From Vitrella brassicaformis CCMP3155 (taxonomy: Eukaryota > Protista > Chromerida), in NCBI GenBank assembly GCA_001179505.1, contig CDMY01000235.1:93322-157321 (forward strand): a stretch of 64,000 nt of DNA, read 5' to 3'. The notes below the pieces were generated by a model. The model saw only the letters and a list, made by a program, of their open reading frames with translations. It had not been told where the DNA came from and did not search any database. Below are positions 49,584 to 56,674 of the stretch, one piece after another. Position 1 is the stretch's first letter. Each line of letters opens with the position of its first letter. The translations under genes and the position numbers were made by a program.

Positions 49584-52464
49584 TCAATCTGACCGCACAT
49601 ACGAATGCATAAAACACCCATCCGCACGAAGGGCCTTTGCGTGGTTGCCTGCTGTCTGCGTGTGTCAGTCTTTCTACCTGGGTTCTGCGCCTTGAGGTTC
49701 CTCCTTCCTGGGCCTCTGCGGATCTCCATCACTCGCCTACGAATGCGACCCTGATGCACACACACACACGCAGCAACAACCAAATCTCGCCTCGCCTCGC
49801 CTCGCCTCGTCTCCAGGGCTTCATCCACCTGGGCCGGCCTCTTTACCCTTTCGTCCCACCTCACTCACCTCTCTGCTCTTGGGGTCGACCTGCGGCACCT
49901 CCACATTCTTGTCGCCCTCGGGCTTCACCTGTGTGAATGGAATGGATGACAGCACAGTACGAGGGGGCCGGGCCATTCATGCATACAGAAGGTGACTGAC
50001 GGCCATGCCATGTGTGTCGGTGGGTGGGTGGGCCACCGACTTACCTTGAAGTGGAAGGATGGCGCCTGTGGGATGCGGGCGTGACGACGCTTGTTGAACC
50101 TCTCCTCGTCATCTGCACGAAGGAATCGACGACGAGACGAGTCGAGTCAGCCGGCCGTGAAGGTGCGACAACCAATGCTCATATATGTGTTAAAGGGCGT
50201 ATCTATCAACTACCTCCTAAGTCTCCTGTGTGTTGGCGGTCAACACGCTCAACCTGATGGCAGGGCAGGCGAACACACGATGGATGGATGGATGGATAGA
50301 TTGACGCCGTGGTGTTGGTGTGTCTGTCTGCTCCCTACCGGTCTGGCGACTACGGGCGAGGGCGCGTCGTCTTCGCGTCGATCGAGGCTGTCACGTTCGT
50401 GCATGACGCTGCGGGCCCACTTCTTGACCAGACGCTCTATCATGCTCTTGTGCTCACGACCCACATCTGCAGCAGCCGCAACCAGTCAAGACACGCACTC
50501 CTTCTTGCCTTCGTTGGTTTTGTTTCTGCGCGCATTTGGTTTGCCTGCCTTTGTGTTTCCAGAGGTCGATGATGACCTCCCCGAGTCTCGGATACGACTG
50601 GCTCAGCACATCAGGGGACAGCTGAGTAAGTGGATCCACCCACCCATACACATCACATCACACATAGAAGGAAGGGTGCAGACAGAGTGACCGATAGATA
50701 CACACAAATGCTCATCTCATGCTCGTTTGCACCGACCGGCAGAGAGATGAGTGTCTCGAGAATCCGACCGCGCACATGGACATTGGGGAGGAGATTGTTG
50801 TGGATCGACAACCAGCTGAAGGATCGACAAGCCACAAACAAGACAGACACAGCTAGCTGGTCCGCTGCTGCCCCTTCCCCTGCCCCGTGCCGCGAGTGAG
50901 TGAGCTTACGATGCCAGGGCGCTGCAGAGTTTGCCGCCGTGCTCCCCGATGAAGTAGTCGCGCCACTTGGCCTGCACCACACGAGCCATGAGACAGCCAG
51001 TGGTGCAGGGGAGGTGGTATGGGTGTGTGTTGTGGCTGGCTGACCATGCTGATGATGTTCATCATGAGGTCCACGTTGTCCACCTTGGCCGTGGCCGGCC
51101 GTCCCGCCTCGATCGAATTCAGATCTGACGCACCAGCTCACACACAAAGAGGTGAGTTACGGGTGGTGTGTGTGTGACCGAGGTGCTCTGACTACCTGCT
51201 TGGTGCGCTTCTTCCATGTCCCTGATACGGTCATAAGCGAATCCCTGACAACGACAAGACCCACGCACTTTGGCGACTCAGTCAGTCGGTGCACCGTCGT
51301 GTCTGTCCCTCACTCACTCACCGAAGCATCAGCCCGATTGATGTCGGCCGCCTTCCTCTTGGACTTGCGCTGCTCTGTGGACACACCACACCACACACAG
51401 AAGGAGAGAGAAGACATTGCAGGTCAGTCTGTCTTTCATGTTGTGCGTGTGTCTGTTCTTTTCTGCCCGCCACTCACTCTTCCACTCTTCGATCTTCCTG
51501 TCCTCTTTGGTCACCTCCTTCTCTGACCGAGGGCTAGACTCGCCACCATACTAACCAACCACACACACAGACAGACACAGAAATAGACACAGATGCAACA
51601 CATCCCCACCCGTCAGTCAGCCGTGTGCCTGCCTGCGTGTTGTGTCTGTCTGCCCTCGGTCGGTCGCTTACGTCGCTGCCCTCGGCCGCCGCCTTGAGTG
51701 GGTCATCTTCGCTCTGTGCCTTGGCCTTGCGCTTCCTCTCTGGCTTCTTGCGCTCCTTCTTCTTCTTTTTCTTCTTGTGGCGCCCCTCCTCCTCATCAAT
51801 GTCATCGGGCGACGGCTCGCCGCCCTCCTCCACGCCCGGCATCTCGTCCTGGTACTCCTGGTCCTGGCGGGGCTGCTGGTCGGGTGGTTCATGGGCTGGC
51901 GCGTCCTCCTCGTCGTCGGGCTTCTCGTCGGCGTCACCGAAAATGTCCGCATAGACATTCTGACAAGGCAGGCAGGCAGGCAGATACGATACAGACAGAC
52001 GGTGGAGGCAGGCCACTCATGTCATGTGGGTGGTTGTTTCTCTCTCTGTGTGGGTCTGGTGTGTGTCGTTTGTCGTGTCAACTCGCTTAGCTTACGATGT
52101 GCTGTCCCTCTTCCTCGTGGTCGTCATCGTTGCCCTGCTGCGCCGCATCGTCTCCTCCCTCGACCTCCATGCCTTGCTCCTCCTCCATGCCGCCATCGCC
52201 GCCATCGCCCTCCATCCCCTCGTCGCCCTCCATGGTCTCATCTATCGCTGCTTGTTGCTGCTGCTCGCCACCCCCAGCAAGAGCAGGAGCCTCACCGCCC
52301 TGCTCCTCCTCATCATCGGCCTGGTCCTCCAGGTCAAAGTCGTCGTCGTCGTTGTCGTCCTGCTCGTCTGGCGCATCAGCCTCGTCCATGGCTGCCGGCA
52401 TGGGTGGCGCGAAGCCGCCGGCCACGGGCTGGGTCTCGCCAAACTCGAATGCACGGTCAGCCAT
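49584..52464 (-). CDS. IWS1: IWS1/Spn1-like transcription elongation factor (TFIIS N-terminal domain)
   Basis: Long acidic N-terminus, then LPNVHVRGRILETLISLP...LGEVIIDLWKH...HKSMIERLVKKWARSVM and HARIP, as in the IWS1 C-terminal domain. The last exon is uncertain. Confidence 0.7.
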
Positions 52465-52716
52465 CGGATTTTCTCAAGCAGATCTGCAGATGTCGTGGTG
52501 TGCTGCAGGAGGGGTGATCTTTCTGCCGTTTTCTCAGCTTGCCAGCGGCGAGCTTGCGGTTGCGAGCTTAGCTCGACTGGAGGGAGGAGATCTTGAAGCG
52601 TGGAAGCTGATTTGAAGTGAGCAAGAGACGCAGAGAGACCGCCTGAGCTGCACAGCATCGATCATCTCCTCCAGCCCTTCCCCCGAGGTCGCTTGTCGTC
52701 TCCCTGCCCCTTCCAG

Positions 52717-53375
52717 ATGGCTGATTCGACGGAGTTGGAGAAGAGCGAGACCCCCGCCACCGACACACAGCCTGTGGAGGACCCCTCGGGCGACGCAGCG
52801 GCCGACATCGAGACGAACAAGGAGGTCGACCACCACGCTGACGAGGGCGATGAGGGTGATGCAGCCAACGCTGAGGTCAATGACTCCACGACGGTCACTG
52901 GTGTGGGCACTGTCATTGATACGGCCACTGGCAAGAGGACGGAGCGCATCCAGCTGTCGCTCGCGAGGCCGCTGGGCTTCTACGAGCGCACTGCGTACGA
53001 GCGGTTCGCTACGGGGACCGAGGTCATCGTGGTGACGGCCCTGGGCAACGCCATCTCGCTGGCCATCCAGCTGGCCGACGTGCTGGAGGAGAAGCAGTAC
53101 TGCAAGAAGAGCAAGGTCATGACGTCGTTCGAGGGCGGCGAGCACCCCAGGGGCCCGCGGCACCCCACCGCCGGCATCACCATCCACCTCGAACGCAACC
53201 CCACCTTCAAGGGAAGCAAGATCCCGCAAGGCATGGTGGGCTTCCACAAGCCCGAGGGCGAGGCCAAGTTCACCCCCATCTACGACGACAAACCCATGCA
53301 GACCTTCGCTTCTGTCAATGCAGGTAGGTGTGTGGTGGGTGTGCTGGGGAATGGGCGAGCGGTGGGCTGATGTCA

Positions 53376-53411
<36 letters not shown>

Positions 53412-53584
53412 GGCTGTGTGGCTGTGTGTCTGGGCAGGTGACTACGAGTTGTTCGTCGGTGGGAGTGCTTTGAACGCTGCCTTCAAGACGACTCTCGAGG
53501 CAGCGGAGCAGAACATTGACCGATATGCACCTCTGCACAAGGTAGGTCGGGTCGGCACACACGCCACTCATGCACACACACACA

Positions 53585-53617
<33 letters not shown>

Positions 53618-55211
53618 TGTGTGCGTGCCCCCAGTCGTTGGTTGAGAAGGCTTTGAAGGAGAACCCCAACGCCACCAAGGGCGAGGACATCCGGCTGGTC
53701 GAGGCCGTCAACCTTTCAGAACACCACCCGTACGCATCCATCGCACACACACAGACACCGACGCAGGCACACCACACGTCGTCTGTCTGTCTGTCTGTCT
53801 TATGTGTGTGTGTGTCAGTGACTTGCATGCGTCCTTCTGCCGGATCTGCTTCGACCTGAAGGACAAGGGTCCCGAGGGGTGCAAAGCCGTCGGCGCTGTC
53901 TTCCTTGACATATTCAGGGAAGACAAGAGGCCAAAAGGCGCCGTAAGTGACCTGACTGACACATACACACACAAATGCGATGCGGGCAGCAAGACACACG
54001 GACGGACGATGGGCGCTTGTGTGTTTGTGTGGGATTTCGTTCAGAAGAAGAACATCGGCATGATCTATGTGGTCGGCCCGAAGGGCAAGGACTTCGGCTC
54101 CAAAGAAGAGTTCCTCGGAGCTGGTACGCCACACACACATGACATGATGCTGGCCGCTACGCTACTCGTTTCCTTCCCTGCACACATGCCTCTCCTTGGT
54201 CACCTGTCTGTCTGTCAGTGAGCAAGACGGCCAACAACCTGATGACGGCACTGGTGGACTACAACGGCCTCGTCAAGCGGACACGGCGAGACAACAGGGA
54301 CCTCGACAGACTTGATGTCGCCAGGTGGGTGAGGTGACCAGCGGACACGCACCACATATATATACTCACACCCCACCCACCTTTGTGAAAGCGCGTCGTG
54401 TGTGTGTGTGTCGACAGGATCGCTCTGTTCTCTGGAGGGGTGTACAAGCACGAGGACGCCACCAAGATGGAGGTCGCTGAGAAGATCATCGAGGTCAGAG
54501 AAAGGAAAGGCATCTACTCCGGGTGTCTGTCCATCTGGGCCACATGTGCTTTGACGTGACGCCACCTCTCGTTCTGTTCTGTGTATGGTTGGTATGTGTC
54601 ACTCAGGGCATCACGACTGGCTACCGGTATCGGCTCGCGCCCAGGGTCACCTTCGCATTCGATGACAACGTCTTCCAAGAGGTACACACACACGCATACA
54701 GACAGACAGACGAGAGGAAGCGCCCCGCATATCAGATCATGTGAAAACTTCCTTCCTTGTGGCATTGCAGGCATGGAAGCAGATGACCGGCGCCCCCGAC
54801 AAGCCCACCACCACCACCACCACGACCACTGACGAAGCCGCCGCCAAAGCCCCAGACGCACCACAGCCAGACAAGCAGGCAGACGAGGCCACCGCAGGCA
54901 AGCCAGAGGAGGCCGCAGCCGAGCCAGAGGCCCCCGAAGCCAGCCAAGACGACACCACGAAGGAGCAGCAACAGGACGACACAGCGGCTGAGAAGCCGAC
55001 AGAGGAGTCCAAGGACGCACCTCACACCGACACCAACGGCAAGGACGAGACTGCCGCTGCTTCTGGCAAGGTGGACGAGGCGCAAGAGGCCGAGACGGAT
55101 GAAACGACTGGCAAGGAGGAGGCCAAAGAGGACGACAAGGAGGAGAGCAGTGGCAAGGAGGAGATGAACGGCGTGGTGGGTGGGGCACCGACGGAGAACG
55201 GACAAGAGTGA
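52717..55211 (+). CDS. Alba domain + macrodomain-like fusion protein with acidic tails (about 9 exons)
   Basis: Alba: IQLSLARPLGFYERTAYERFATGTEVIVVTALGNAISLAIQLADVLEEKQYCKKSKVMTSF...ITIHLER. Macro-like: SVNAGDYELFVGGSALNAAF...MIYVVGP...RIALFSGGVY. Confidence 0.75.
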
Positions 55212-56674
55212 TGGATGGATGTCATGTCTGGCGTGCGATGCGGTGTGGGGCGTGTGGTGTCTGTCTGTCTATCTATCTATCTATACTTCCTACCTACCGC
55301 TGCATTGCATACATTGCATTTGTCAATTCATATGACGGATGGCGGGCTCTCCAGGAGCCCAGCCCAGCCCCCCTTCTGTCTGTCTGTGTCATGTCGCTTC
55401 TCGAGCCCCTACCTCTCTCTCCTCTACCTCTATACGTGTGTGTACTTGTCTGTCTATCTGTATGGGTGTGCGTGTCGCATATGGCCTGCTTGGTGAACGG
55501 ACGGGTGTATGTGTATGTGTGTGATGGGTGTGGTGTATGAGTGAGAGCCGGGATGGTACTCCAATGACCGGAGTAGACCGTGGCCCCGCTGCTCCATCCT
55601 TGCCTGCCTGCCTGCCTGCCTGTCTTCGTGTTCTGCGAGAGTACGGCTACACACATGCATACCTACATGGGTCCATCAATGTGTCTGCGTGTGCGTGTCC
55701 GTGTGTGTGGATTTAAGCATCATATGCCATCCCATTCACTCACTGACTCACTCACTGTGTACAGGTGCCACCCACCTGTGGTCGGGGGCATCACGTCGAG
55801 TGGAGGCCCCCCCCGGCCGCCGTTGTCCATCCATGCCATCCATCCACACATACACACACACCACTGCCTGCCTGCCTGACTGACTCACTGACTGACTGAC
55901 TGACCGACTGACTGACTGACCGACCGACTGTTTGGCTGATCCTAGTCGAATGAATGGCTGCCTATTTCTCTCTCGTCTGTCCAACCTGCCTGCCTGCTTG
56001 CTTGTTTTGCTTGATTGGCCCGGTCTCGTTTTGTCCGGAGGGCGGGGCGGGATGGCTGGGGGCAAACCGGCACTCGTGAGGTCGTGCGATGACTGGTGCC
56101 TCGCGTCCCTTTTCGTGCCTGCGCTTTCAAAGGGGCACTTGCCATGCCGTCCACCAAGCCTTACCTCCCTCCCTCTCTCCCCGCCTGTCTCTCTCAGCTA
56201 GGCCGTCATCTCTCCCTTATCTACCTTTCTCTGCCTCCCTCCCTCCCTCCCTCCCCTGTTATGTACAGCACTGACGTTGCACCAGTGCATTTTCCTATTG
56301 GCCGACCATACCATAGACAAAGGATGGATATGTGCTCAAATGTGCAATGGGGGCGAGCGGGGCTGTCTTGTCTGGTGTGAGTGAGTGGTTGATTTTTCGT
56401 GGAACGGTTTCAATGTTGCATGGTATGGCGTGTGGGGCGGGCGTGTCTTGAGGAGCGGATTTTTGCAAGAATCGGTCGGTCGGTCGCTTGGTTGGTGCGG
56501 GTGTGGTGTGGTGTGCGGTCGTTGCTAGCTAGCTACGGCGATAGAAGGTTTTTGCTTGGGGCTCACCCCTGCCTTCTCGCCTCCCTCGGTCCACCTTACT
56601 TACTCTGTCCGTCCCATCAGCTGCGTGCCTGTCGCTTCCTTCCTCCCTTGCCACCCCAGGGGTGTCTCTTTCTT

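What the first reader, a model, noticed from the sequence alone, without database searches (positions are those of the whole stretch)
52717..55211. Alba nucleic-acid-binding domain fused to a divergent macrodomain
Seen: one spliced frame holds an Alba-like domain (about 52945-53200; FY...ALGNAISLAIQLADVL...KVMTS...ITI.L) directly followed by a domain with macrodomain landmarks in the correct order: SVNAGD (cf. VNAAN), GGSALNAAF (cf. GGGV..AI), MIYVVGP (cf. VIHAVGP) and IALFSGGVY (cf. P.ISTGIY). Established: Alba proteins bind RNA/DNA and regulate translation in Plasmodium, Toxoplasma and trypanosomes; macrodomains read or remove ADP-ribose, or process ADP-ribose-1''-phosphate and O-acetyl-ADP-ribose. 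Inference: I know no characterised Alba-macro fusion. It could couple mRNP or chromatin binding to ADP-ribose signalling or to sirtuin product turnover (archaeal Alba is Sir2-regulated). The NAAN to NAGD change suggests altered catalysis or a binding-only role.
Basis: partly seen in the sequence, partly recalled or inferred. Interest (0 to 1): 0.75.

Follow-up and report, generated by a model that had tools for sequence, protein, structure and literature searches.

The report
Vitrella ALBA4: Alba plus macro-like domain
This gene really does fuse an Alba RNA-binding domain to a macrodomain-fold domain, but it is the chromerid (Vitrella) copy of ALBA4, a protein already known from malaria parasites and their relatives, so the fusion is real and not new.

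Summary
Window 52717-55211 (+) is a clean 9-exon gene with GT-AG introns of 89-114 nt. It encodes 568 aa: an acidic tail, an Alba domain, a macro-fold domain of about 265 aa, and an acidic tail. The model is letter-for-letter the Vitrella brassicaformis protein CEL95698.1, which a transcriptome assembly also holds.

The Alba/macro junction lies inside exon 1, so the fusion does not depend on splicing.

The macro reading is right at fold level:
- A family profile hits the Toxoplasma MAF1A/B crystal structures, some solved with ADP-ribose, at E 1e-13.
- The AF2 model matches MAF1 at Z 28 and canonical macrodomains (PARP14, YmdB, macroH2A, Af1521, MacroD2) at Z 13-15.6.
- Pfam Macro is not matched by sequence.

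The novelty claim fails. The protein is collinear with Plasmodium ALBA4 (41% identity over 364 aa, E 1e-85). The same architecture occurs in Theileria, Babesia, Cardiosporidium, Cystoisospora and gregarines. A 2025 paper describes PfAlba4 as Alba plus a C-terminal "MAF1_Alba4_C" domain that resembles macroH2A.

Still open: whether this domain binds ADP-ribose. The residues at the positions that are catalytic in MacroD-type enzymes vary across the family, which favours binding or scaffolding over hydrolysis. Verdict: already known; modest interest.

The parts
52717..53323 (+). Exon 1 (residues 1-203): acidic N-terminal tail, whole Alba domain, linker and the first strands of the macro-like domain up to SVNAG
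   Evidence: Open frame with a GTAGGT donor. 100% match to P0001 residues 1-202. The domain junction lies inside this exon.
52717..52908 (+). N-terminal acidic, disordered tail (residues 1-64; 19 D/E against 2 K/R)
   Evidence: pLDDT below 50 for residues 1-64. Composition. Not conserved among relatives.
52909..53202 (+). Alba domain (residues 65-162), beta-alpha-beta-alpha-beta-beta, closest to the plant and trypanosome short Albas
   Evidence: PDB 1vm0 E 2.8e-4 with exon 1 alone. Family profile: 1vm0 1.8e-8, rice Alba1 2.6e-8, T. brucei ALBA1 1e-7. Foldseek TM 0.86-0.88 to archaeal Alba. Z 13.7 over 88 residues at rmsd 1.4. Pfam PF01918 reaches only 18.5 bits here, below the cut-off of 25, but 36 and 28.6 bits in orthologues P0002 and P0008.
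53212..54800 (+). MAF1/ALBA4_C-type macro-fold domain (residues 166-432), spread over exons 1-9
   Evidence: Profile against PDB: MAF1A/B E 1e-13. AF2 pLDDT mostly 80-93. Foldseek: MAF1 E 1e-14, TM 0.71-0.78. VIA: Z 27-28 to MAF1 and Z 13-15.6 to canonical macrodomains. All Atlas structure hits are PF01661 clusters.
53438..53541 (+). Exon 2 (residues 203-237): D-YELFVGGSALNAAF loop-1 region and helix
   Evidence: motif conservation
53635..53729 (+). Exon 3 (residues 238-269): part of the helical insert shared with MAF1
53819..53942 (+). Exon 4 (residues 269-310): strands with C276, R277, G294, F297, F301 and P307, each conserved in at least 90% of 34 family members
54045..54123 (+). Exon 5 (residues 311-337): N313...IYVVGP322 strand (N313 and P322 invariant in 34 of 34)
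54219..54324 (+). Exon 6 (residues 337-372): long helix with the NLMTALxDYNG motif
54418..54493 (+). Exon 7 (residues 372-397): R-IALFSGGVYKH loop-2 region and helix
54607..54681 (+). Exon 8 (residues 398-422): GYRY..PRVTFAFD strand
54771..55211 (+). Exon 9 (residues 423-568 plus stop): last helix of the domain, then a 136-residue acidic T/A/E-rich disordered tail specific to Vitrella
   Evidence: pLDDT below 50 from residue 433. The tail is absent from relatives.

Best explanation
The gene encodes the Vitrella brassicaformis orthologue of apicomplexan ALBA4. It is a single-copy protein in which an Alba nucleic-acid-binding domain is followed by a 'MAF1_Alba4_C' domain. That domain is a divergent macrodomain fold carrying a helical insert, the same domain that was crystallised from Toxoplasma MAF1A/B with ADP-ribose bound.

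Shown here:
- the gene model and the one-transcript fusion;
- both folds;
- sequence homology to MAF1;
- collinear orthology to Plasmodium ALBA4;
- strong family conservation of the loops that form the nucleotide cleft in macrodomains (VNAG, VGGxGxN, LFSGG).

Inferred by analogy with Plasmodium ALBA4: the protein sits in cytoplasmic mRNPs, binds RNA through the Alba domain (probably as a dimer with itself or other Albas), and influences mRNA stability or translation.

Inferred from motifs: the macro-like domain acts as a weak ADP-ribose or related-nucleotide binding module, or as a partner-docking module, rather than as a MacroD-type hydrolase. The positions that align with the two MacroD catalytic residues are D204 and N215 here, and both vary across the family.
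For: - Gene model: 9 exons, all GT-AG, in frame, identical to P0001.
- One transcript: the same 568-aa sequence is held by NCBI (CEL95698.1), UniRef and an MMETSP transcriptome ORF.
- Orthology: single copy in the 72.7 Mb genome. 41% identity over 364 aa with Plasmodium ALBA4, E 1e-85, collinear through both domains. Family hits are named 'DNA/RNA-binding protein Alba 4' in Plasmodium, Theileria, Babesia and Cardiosporidium.
- Macro-like domain: MAF1 homology E 1e-13. Foldseek E 1e-14 to 6bxw and 6bxt, which are ADP-ribose complexes. Z 27-28 to MAF1 and Z 13-15.6 over 170-181 aligned residues to PARP14, macroH2A, YmdB, Af1521 and MacroD2. Atlas structure neighbours are all PF01661.
- Motif conservation in 34 sequences: G203 32/34, G210 25/34, G213 29/34, N313 34/34, P322 34/34, S377 28/34, G378 29/34.
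- Literature: PfAlba4 is Alba plus MAF1_Alba4_C and is macroH2A-like by Foldseek (PMC11878077). PfALBA4 co-precipitates with UPF1 and UPF2, and pyalba4 disruption raises mRNA abundance (PMC10449492). Dysregulated transcripts overlap with the dozi, cith and not1-g knockouts (PMC8562791).
Against: - No biochemical data exist for any ALBA4 C-domain.
- Pfam Macro PF01661 does not match any family member, even at E 1. hhalign against a canonical Vitrella macro ORF gives probability 0.2.
- I could not superpose coordinates, so the mapping of ADP-ribose-contacting residues rests on motifs and secondary structure only.
- Vitrella itself has A213 where 29 of 34 relatives have G. Babesia and some other members have degenerate loops, so ligand binding may not be universal.
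- The cellular role is transferred from Plasmodium to a free-living phototroph.
- The low micromolar-range affinity of MAF1 for ADP-ribose is from my memory of Blank et al. 2018, which could not be read here.
Confidence: 0.88

Rival explanations
1. The C-terminal domain is an active MacroD/Poa1p-like enzyme. It would be an ADP-ribosyl hydrolase, an ADP-ribose-1''-phosphatase or an O-acetyl-ADP-ribose deacetylase, brought to RNA or mRNP substrates by the Alba domain.
For: Macro fold at Z 13-15.6 to the hydrolases YmdB, MacroD2 and OiMacroD. The cleft loops VNAG, VGGxG and FSGG are conserved. An acidic or amide residue is kept at both positions that align with the MacroD catalytic N and D: D204 in 21/34 and N in 6/34; N215 in 22/34.
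Against: The position equivalent to the second N of NAAN varies (D/N/S/T) and is T or A in MAF1 (alignments). The position equivalent to the D of GGGVD is N/H/S/T. There is no sequence match to PF01661. As I recall it, the closest solved relative, MAF1, was reported only as a weak ADP-ribose binder, not as an enzyme.
Confidence: 0.1
2. The macro fold is a ligand-free scaffold. The domain serves only as a protein-protein docking surface (for example for UPF1/UPF2, GBP2 or other Albas), much as MAF1b uses its C-terminal helix to engage host mitochondrial proteins.
For: PfALBA4 co-precipitates with UPF1 and UPF2, and the authors suggest the MAF1 domain may mediate this. The loops are degenerate in the Babesia orthologues and in P0005. 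Vitrella carries G213A. The family has a helical insert absent from canonical macros: about 250 residues align to MAF1 against about 175 to canonical macros.
Against: The glycine-rich loops and the FSGG loop are among the best conserved positions in most lineages, and partly in the bacterial Roseivirga homologues. That is hard to explain without a small-ligand cleft. MAF1 crystals do contain ADP-ribose (6bxw and 6bxt).
Confidence: 0.3
3. The fusion is a gene-model artefact that joins two adjacent genes.
For: Eight short introns are needed to build the C-domain. An AG preceded by a pyrimidine tract sits directly before the ATG at 52717, so the 5' end could be more complex.
Against: The Alba domain and the first strands of the macro-like domain lie in one uninterrupted exon. 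An MMETSP transcript ORF has the identical 568-aa sequence. More than 30 relatives from at least seven genera have the same architecture, several from transcriptomes.
Confidence: 0.02

Closest known systems
Plasmodium ALBA4 (PF3D7_1347500 / PyALBA4), 'DNA/RNA-binding protein Alba 4'
   Same: Same two-domain architecture in the same order. 41% identity over 364 aa, E 1e-85. The motifs are shared: TPxYD, VNAGD, VGGxGxN.AF, N..MVYVVGP, LMTALCDYNG, RICLFSGG..KH and GYRHGP.PR.NFAYD.
   Different: Vitrella adds a 64-aa acidic N-tail and a 136-aa acidic T/A/E-rich C-tail. It has ARPL where the family has KRPR in Alba strand 1, and GGSA where the family has GGxG. The organism is a free-living photosynthetic chromerid, not a parasite. 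No functional data exist for it.
Toxoplasma gondii MAF1A/MAF1B C-terminal domain (PDB 6bxr, 6bxs, 6bxt, 6bxw)
   Same: Homologous domain: E 1e-13 by profile, Z 27-28 with 239-250 aligned residues at rmsd 2.5-3.1. It shares the FTPLYD...VDAG...GGxGxNGxFA start and the N..M.Y.VAP strand. It was crystallised with ADP-ribose.
   Different: MAF1 has no Alba domain. By my own knowledge it is a secreted dense-granule effector anchored in the vacuole membrane and restricted to some coccidia. Identity is only 22-25%. Sequence similarity fades in the C-terminal third, where the HMM alignment stops at about profile position 342.
Canonical macrodomains (Pfam PF01661: Af1521, macroH2A1.1, MacroD2, YmdB, PARP14 macro1)
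   Same: Three-layer alpha/beta/alpha fold: Z 13-15.6 over 170-181 residues at rmsd 2.6-3.3. Landmarks sit at matching structural positions: NAxx at a strand end, a GG loop before helix 1, hhhhxGP on the central strand, and an S-G-G-h-Y/F loop after the next strand.
   Different: There is no detectable sequence-profile match and 12-16% identity. An insert of roughly 80 residues, partly helical, is present. NAAN becomes NAGD, and GGGVD becomes GGxG(I/L)N.
Short eukaryotic Alba proteins (Arabidopsis At2g34160 1vm0, rice Alba1 9mcd, T. brucei ALBA1 7dl8)
   Same: These are the best sequence and structure matches for residues 62-166.
   Different: They are single-domain proteins of about 110-135 aa, or carry RGG tails. 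None carries a macro-like domain.

Membership tests
Alba (Pfam PF01918 / IF3-C-like fold) | beta-alpha-beta-alpha-beta-beta topology of about 90 residues, superposable on solved Alba proteins | tested here: met
   DSSP of the model: E74-80, H86-98, E103-109, H110-125, E129-139, E151-160. TM 0.86-0.88 at rmsd 1.5-2 to archaeal Albas. Z 13.7 over 88 aligned residues at rmsd 1.4.
Alba (Pfam PF01918 / IF3-C-like fold) | Sequence match to the Pfam model above its gathering score | tested here: inconclusive
   The Vitrella protein scores 16.5-18.5 bits against a cut-off of 25. Orthologues P0002 (36 bits) and P0008 (28.6 bits) pass. The family profile hits PDB Albas at E 1.8e-8 to 1e-7.
Alba (Pfam PF01918 / IF3-C-like fold) | Binds RNA or DNA | not testable with these tools
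   Needs EMSA or CLIP.
ALBA4 orthologue group of Apicomplexa | Collinear full-length similarity to Plasmodium ALBA4 across both domains | tested here: met
   BLASTP E 1e-85, 41% identity, residues 67-429 against 14-363. The profile search returns Plasmodium ALBA4 at E 1e-146 to 1e-154.
ALBA4 orthologue group of Apicomplexa | Only copy of this architecture in the genome (no closer paralogue) | tested here: met
   A six-frame search of the whole genome with the family profile finds only this gene's own exons. An exon 1 search finds one place.
MAF1_Alba4_C domain (MAF1-type macro-like domain) | Significant sequence homology to the crystallised MAF1 C-terminal domain | tested here: met
   hmmsearch of profile A1 against PDB: 6bxs 1e-13, 6bxr 2e-13, 6bxw 2.1e-13.
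MAF1_Alba4_C domain (MAF1-type macro-like domain) | Same fold over the whole domain, including the insert | tested here: met
   Z 27.4-28.2 over 239-250 aligned residues of 265-273. Foldseek TM 0.71-0.78.
Macrodomain (Pfam PF01661 Macro) | Macro fold (mixed beta sheet between helices) | tested here: met
   Z 13-15.6 to PARP14, macroH2A, YmdB, Af1521 and MacroD2. Foldseek E 5e-6 to 2e-4. Atlas structure neighbours are all PF01661, TM up to 0.79 by target.
Macrodomain (Pfam PF01661 Macro) | Sequence match to the Pfam Macro model | tested here: not met
   No PF01661 hit at E up to 10 for the exons or up to 1 for ten family members. The genome-wide PF01661 scan finds other loci but not this one. 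hhalign probability is 0.2. So this is a macro-fold relative, not a PF01661 member.
Macrodomain (Pfam PF01661 Macro) | Binds ADP-ribose in the cleft between loop 1 (GGG) and loop 2 (G-I/V-Y/F) | not testable with these tools
   The loops are conserved in sequence, and the homologue MAF1 was crystallised with ADP-ribose.
MacroD-type hydrolases | Catalytic Asn of NAAN and Asp of GGGVD | tested here: inconclusive
   By motif position these are D204 (family: D 21, N 6, S 4, T 2) and N215 (family: N 22, H 4, S 3, T 2). The mapping is by motif and secondary structure, not by superposition.

The most novel reading that the evidence does not exclude
The ALBA4 macro-like domain is a genuine reader of ADP-ribose or a related NAD-derived ligand (free ADP-ribose, O-acetyl-ADP-ribose, or an ADP-ribosylated protein or RNA end). 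It would tie mRNP fate to NAD+ metabolism, and it was already present in the photosynthetic common ancestor of chromerids and Apicomplexa. The secreted Toxoplasma effector MAF1 would be a later offshoot of this housekeeping domain. The patchy Roseivirga homologues would mark a transfer between a marine bacterium and a myzozoan.
Probability: 0.25. Interest if true: 0.6.

Novelty: already known. Interest (0 to 1): 0.25.

Why it matters
The result corrects the lead. The Alba-macro fusion is not a new architecture. It is ALBA4, a regulator of mRNA fate already studied in malaria parasites, with a C-domain that is catalogued and has been reported as macroH2A-like.

Three things remain useful:
- The chromerid orthologue shows the fusion predates parasitism in the lineage.
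- The nucleotide-cleft loops are conserved in most lineages, so ADP-ribose binding by ALBA4 is a concrete hypothesis that is easy to test and still untested.
- The same domain occurs alone in the marine bacterial genus Roseivirga, which gives a simpler protein for biochemistry.

Tried and rejected
- Pfam scan exon by exon: only a sub-threshold Alba hit. The macro exons are 25-41 aa, too short to be informative.
- Word-indexed search with exon 1: nothing. The length window of 111-353 aa excludes the full-length relatives.
- Word-indexed search with profile A1: swamped by low-complexity words from the acidic tails, 4 hits only. It was repeated with tail-free members (A3).
- hhalign of the family against one canonical Vitrella macro ORF: probability 0.2. 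The relation to canonical macros is visible only at fold level.
- Reading Blank et al. 2018 on the MAF1 structures and Munoz et al. 2017 on PyALBA4: not held. The MAF1 ADP-ribose contact residues could therefore not be transferred, and MAF1's affinity is quoted from memory only.
- Two citing papers said nothing about the macro domain.
- Genomic context of the Roseivirga homologue: housekeeping neighbours, no functional clue.
It was rerun with the single bacterial protein.
- Pfam on eight neighbouring window ORFs and the bacterial protein: no hits.
- Rejected as an explanation: a two-gene artefact, because the junction lies inside exon 1 and a transcript ORF is identical.
- Joined step left out: I did not type or hand the joined spliced protein to any search tool. 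Exons were searched by reference. The full-length protein was used only as database record P0001, which the exon 1 search returned. A local script only checked that the two are equal.
Full report
**1. The sequence**

The region is eukaryotic, about 58-60% G+C. Reading 52400-55500 and checking frames by script gives a nine-exon gene on the + strand:

| Exon | Window coordinates |
|---|---|
| 1 | 52717-53323 |
| 2 | 53438-53541 |
| 3 | 53635-53729 |
| 4 | 53819-53942 |
| 5 | 54045-54123 |
| 6 | 54219-54324 |
| 7 | 54418-54493 |
| 8 | 54607-54681 |
| 9 | 54771-55211 |

Every intron is 89-114 nt and starts with GT and ends with AG. The phases connect, and the product is 568 aa.

**2. How the spliced protein was handled**

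I did not type or submit the joined model to any search tool, so that joined step was left out.

The library-wide HMMER search with exon 1 returned a 568-aa database protein, P0001. A local script showed it to be identical to my model. All full-length work used that record.

P0001 is CEL95698.1 / UniRef A0A0G4EI70 of Vitrella brassicaformis CCMP3155, named 'DNA/RNA-binding protein Alba-like domain-containing protein'. The identical sequence is also held as an MMETSP transcriptome ORF.

**3. Is the fusion real?**

Yes, on three counts:
- The Alba domain (residues 65-162) and the first strands of the second domain (up to SVNAG, residue 203) lie in the same uninterrupted exon 1.
- A transcript-derived ORF has the same 568 residues.
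- More than 30 relatives share the architecture, several of them from transcriptomes.

The gene is single-copy in Vitrella.

**4. The Alba domain**

- Pfam scores it below threshold in Vitrella (18.5 bits against 25) but above threshold in orthologues (36 and 28.6 bits).
- Exon 1 alone hits Arabidopsis At2g34160 (1vm0) at E 2.8e-4.
- The family profile hits 1vm0, rice Alba1 and T. brucei ALBA1 at 1.8e-8 to 1e-7.
- The AF2 model has the beta-alpha-beta-alpha-beta-beta order. It superposes on solved Albas at TM 0.86-0.88 and at Z 13.7 with rmsd 1.4.

**5. The second domain**

Pfam has no family for it, and canonical Macro is not detectable by sequence.

A profile of nine family members does hit the crystal structures of Toxoplasma gondii mitochondrial association factor 1 A and B at E 1e-13.

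The AF2 model has pLDDT of about 80-93 over residues 65-430. Its structure matches are:

| Target | Tool | Score | Aligned | Call |
|---|---|---|---|---|
| MAF1, including ADP-ribose complexes 6bxw and 6bxt | Foldseek | E 1e-14, TM 0.71-0.78 | 266-278 columns | 43 |
| MAF1 | VIA-align | Z 27-28 | 239-250 residues | 52 |
| PARP14 macro1, macroH2A, YmdB, Af1521, PARP9, O. iheyensis MacroD, MacroD2, viral macros | VIA-align | Z 13-15.6, rmsd about 2.6-3.5 | 155-182 residues | 52 |

The Atlas's own model independently has only PF01661 clusters as structural neighbours.

- VNAG ends a strand.
- GGS precedes the next helix.
- IYVVGP is the central strand.
- LFSGGVY is the loop after the following strand.

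So the fold assignment is right. The family is best described as the MAF1/ALBA4_C branch of the macro fold, with an insert of about 80 residues, rather than as a PF01661 member.

**6. What it is**

P0001 aligns with Plasmodium ALBA4 over 364 residues at 41% identity, E 1e-85, collinear through both domains.

Family members are named 'DNA/RNA-binding protein Alba 4' in Plasmodium, Theileria, Babesia caballi and Cardiosporidium. They also occur in Cystoisospora and in the gregarines Selenidium and Lankesteria.

The literature already describes the architecture. The fusion is known, named and widespread in Apicomplexa. Vitrella adds a chromerid member.

**7. How it most likely works**

Evidence from Plasmodium:
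- PfALBA4 co-precipitates with UPF1 and UPF2.
- PyALBA4 disruption raises mRNA abundance.
- PyALBA4 associates with GBP2 (PMC10449492).
- Transcripts dysregulated in pyalba4- overlap those of the dozi, cith and not1-g knockouts (PMC8562791).

By orthology I infer a cytoplasmic mRNP role for the Vitrella protein, with RNA binding through the Alba domain.

For the macro-like domain, a 34-sequence alignment gives these conservation counts:

| Position | Conservation |
|---|---|
| G203 | 32/34 |
| G210 | 25/34 |
| G211 | 24/34 |
| G213 | 29/34 |
| N313 | 34/34 |
| P322 | 34/34 |
| S377 | 28/34 |
| G378 | 29/34 |
| H383 | 28/34 |
| K388 | 31/34 |

This pattern fits a preserved small-ligand cleft like the one that holds ADP-ribose in MAF1.

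The positions that line up with the MacroD catalytic pair are variable. The second N of NAAN corresponds to D204, which is D/N/S/T in the family and T or A in MAF1. The D of GGGVD corresponds to N215, which is N/H/S/T. I therefore favour weak nucleotide binding or partner docking over hydrolysis.

Caveats:
- Vitrella has A213 instead of the usual G.
- Babesia orthologues have degenerate loops.
- The residue mapping is by motif and secondary structure, not by superposition.
- MAF1's low affinity for ADP-ribose is from my memory of Blank et al. 2018, which was not readable here.

**8. Side observation**

The C-domain alone occurs as a 277-aa protein in the marine Bacteroidota genus Roseivirga. 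It scores E 9e-24 against the family profile and is 29% identical over 227 residues to the Vitrella protein, pairwise E 3e-19. It sits in long bacterial contigs among housekeeping genes. The close-relative scan of 185,579 species found it only in seven Roseivirga genomes. It keeps VNAG, the N..MIYVVPP strand and an FSTGYF loop. This suggests a transfer between bacteria and myzozoans. The direction is unknown.

**9. Verdict**

The fold interpretation is confirmed. The novelty is refuted. The finding is an uncharacterised orthologue of a known, named family. What remains is a testable but unproven hypothesis that ALBA4 reads ADP-ribose-like ligands.

Noticed in passing
L015:8001-8834; L016-L022:4001-4831: A stand-alone bacterial homologue of the ALBA4/MAF1 macro-like domain (277 aa, no Alba domain, no Pfam hit). 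The close-relative scan found it only in seven Roseivirga (marine Bacteroidota) genomes, among housekeeping genes. It is 29% identical to the Vitrella domain (E 3e-19). This may be a bacterium-myzozoan gene transfer; the direction is unknown.
   Followed up: partly
window 53378-53410, 53575-53626, 53784-53818, 54396-54412: Several introns of this gene carry dinucleotide or tetranucleotide microsatellites: (GT)n, (CA)n(CT)n(GT)n and (CTGT)n. Similar CTGT/CTAT runs fill the 3' flank at 55260-55290.
   Followed up: no
window 52087-52464 (-) and 51534-52016 (-): Very acidic open frames on the opposite strand start about 250 nt upstream of the ALBA4 ATG. This looks like a divergently transcribed neighbour sharing a short promoter region. 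No Pfam family matches.
   Followed up: partly
window 52700-52719: A pyrimidine tract plus AG (cccttccAG) lies directly before the ATG at 52717. There may be an intron in the 5' UTR or an upstream non-coding exon. The coding sequence is unaffected, because a stop precedes the ORF that starts at 52693.
   Followed up: no
P0039, P0041, P0042, P0044 (Babesia), P0005, P0009: Babesia ALBA4 orthologues and a few others have lost the VNAG/VGGxG and R..LFSGG loop motifs while keeping N313 and P322. If the domain binds a ligand, that function has probably been lost in some lineages.
   Followed up: partly
window 52960-52971 and 53456-53467 (P0001 residues 82-85 and 210-213): Vitrella-specific departures from otherwise conserved family positions: ARPL where relatives have KRPR on the first Alba strand, and GGSA where 29 of 34 relatives have GGxG.
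   Followed up: no
PDB 9hqv_Yf, 9i05_Xm, 9g6k_LC (fold search rows): Three Toxoplasma mitoribosomal proteins match the model's macro-like domain at Z 13.9-15.2, with 194-209 aligned residues against 155-182 for canonical macrodomains. They may carry a similarly extended macro-like module.
   Followed up: no
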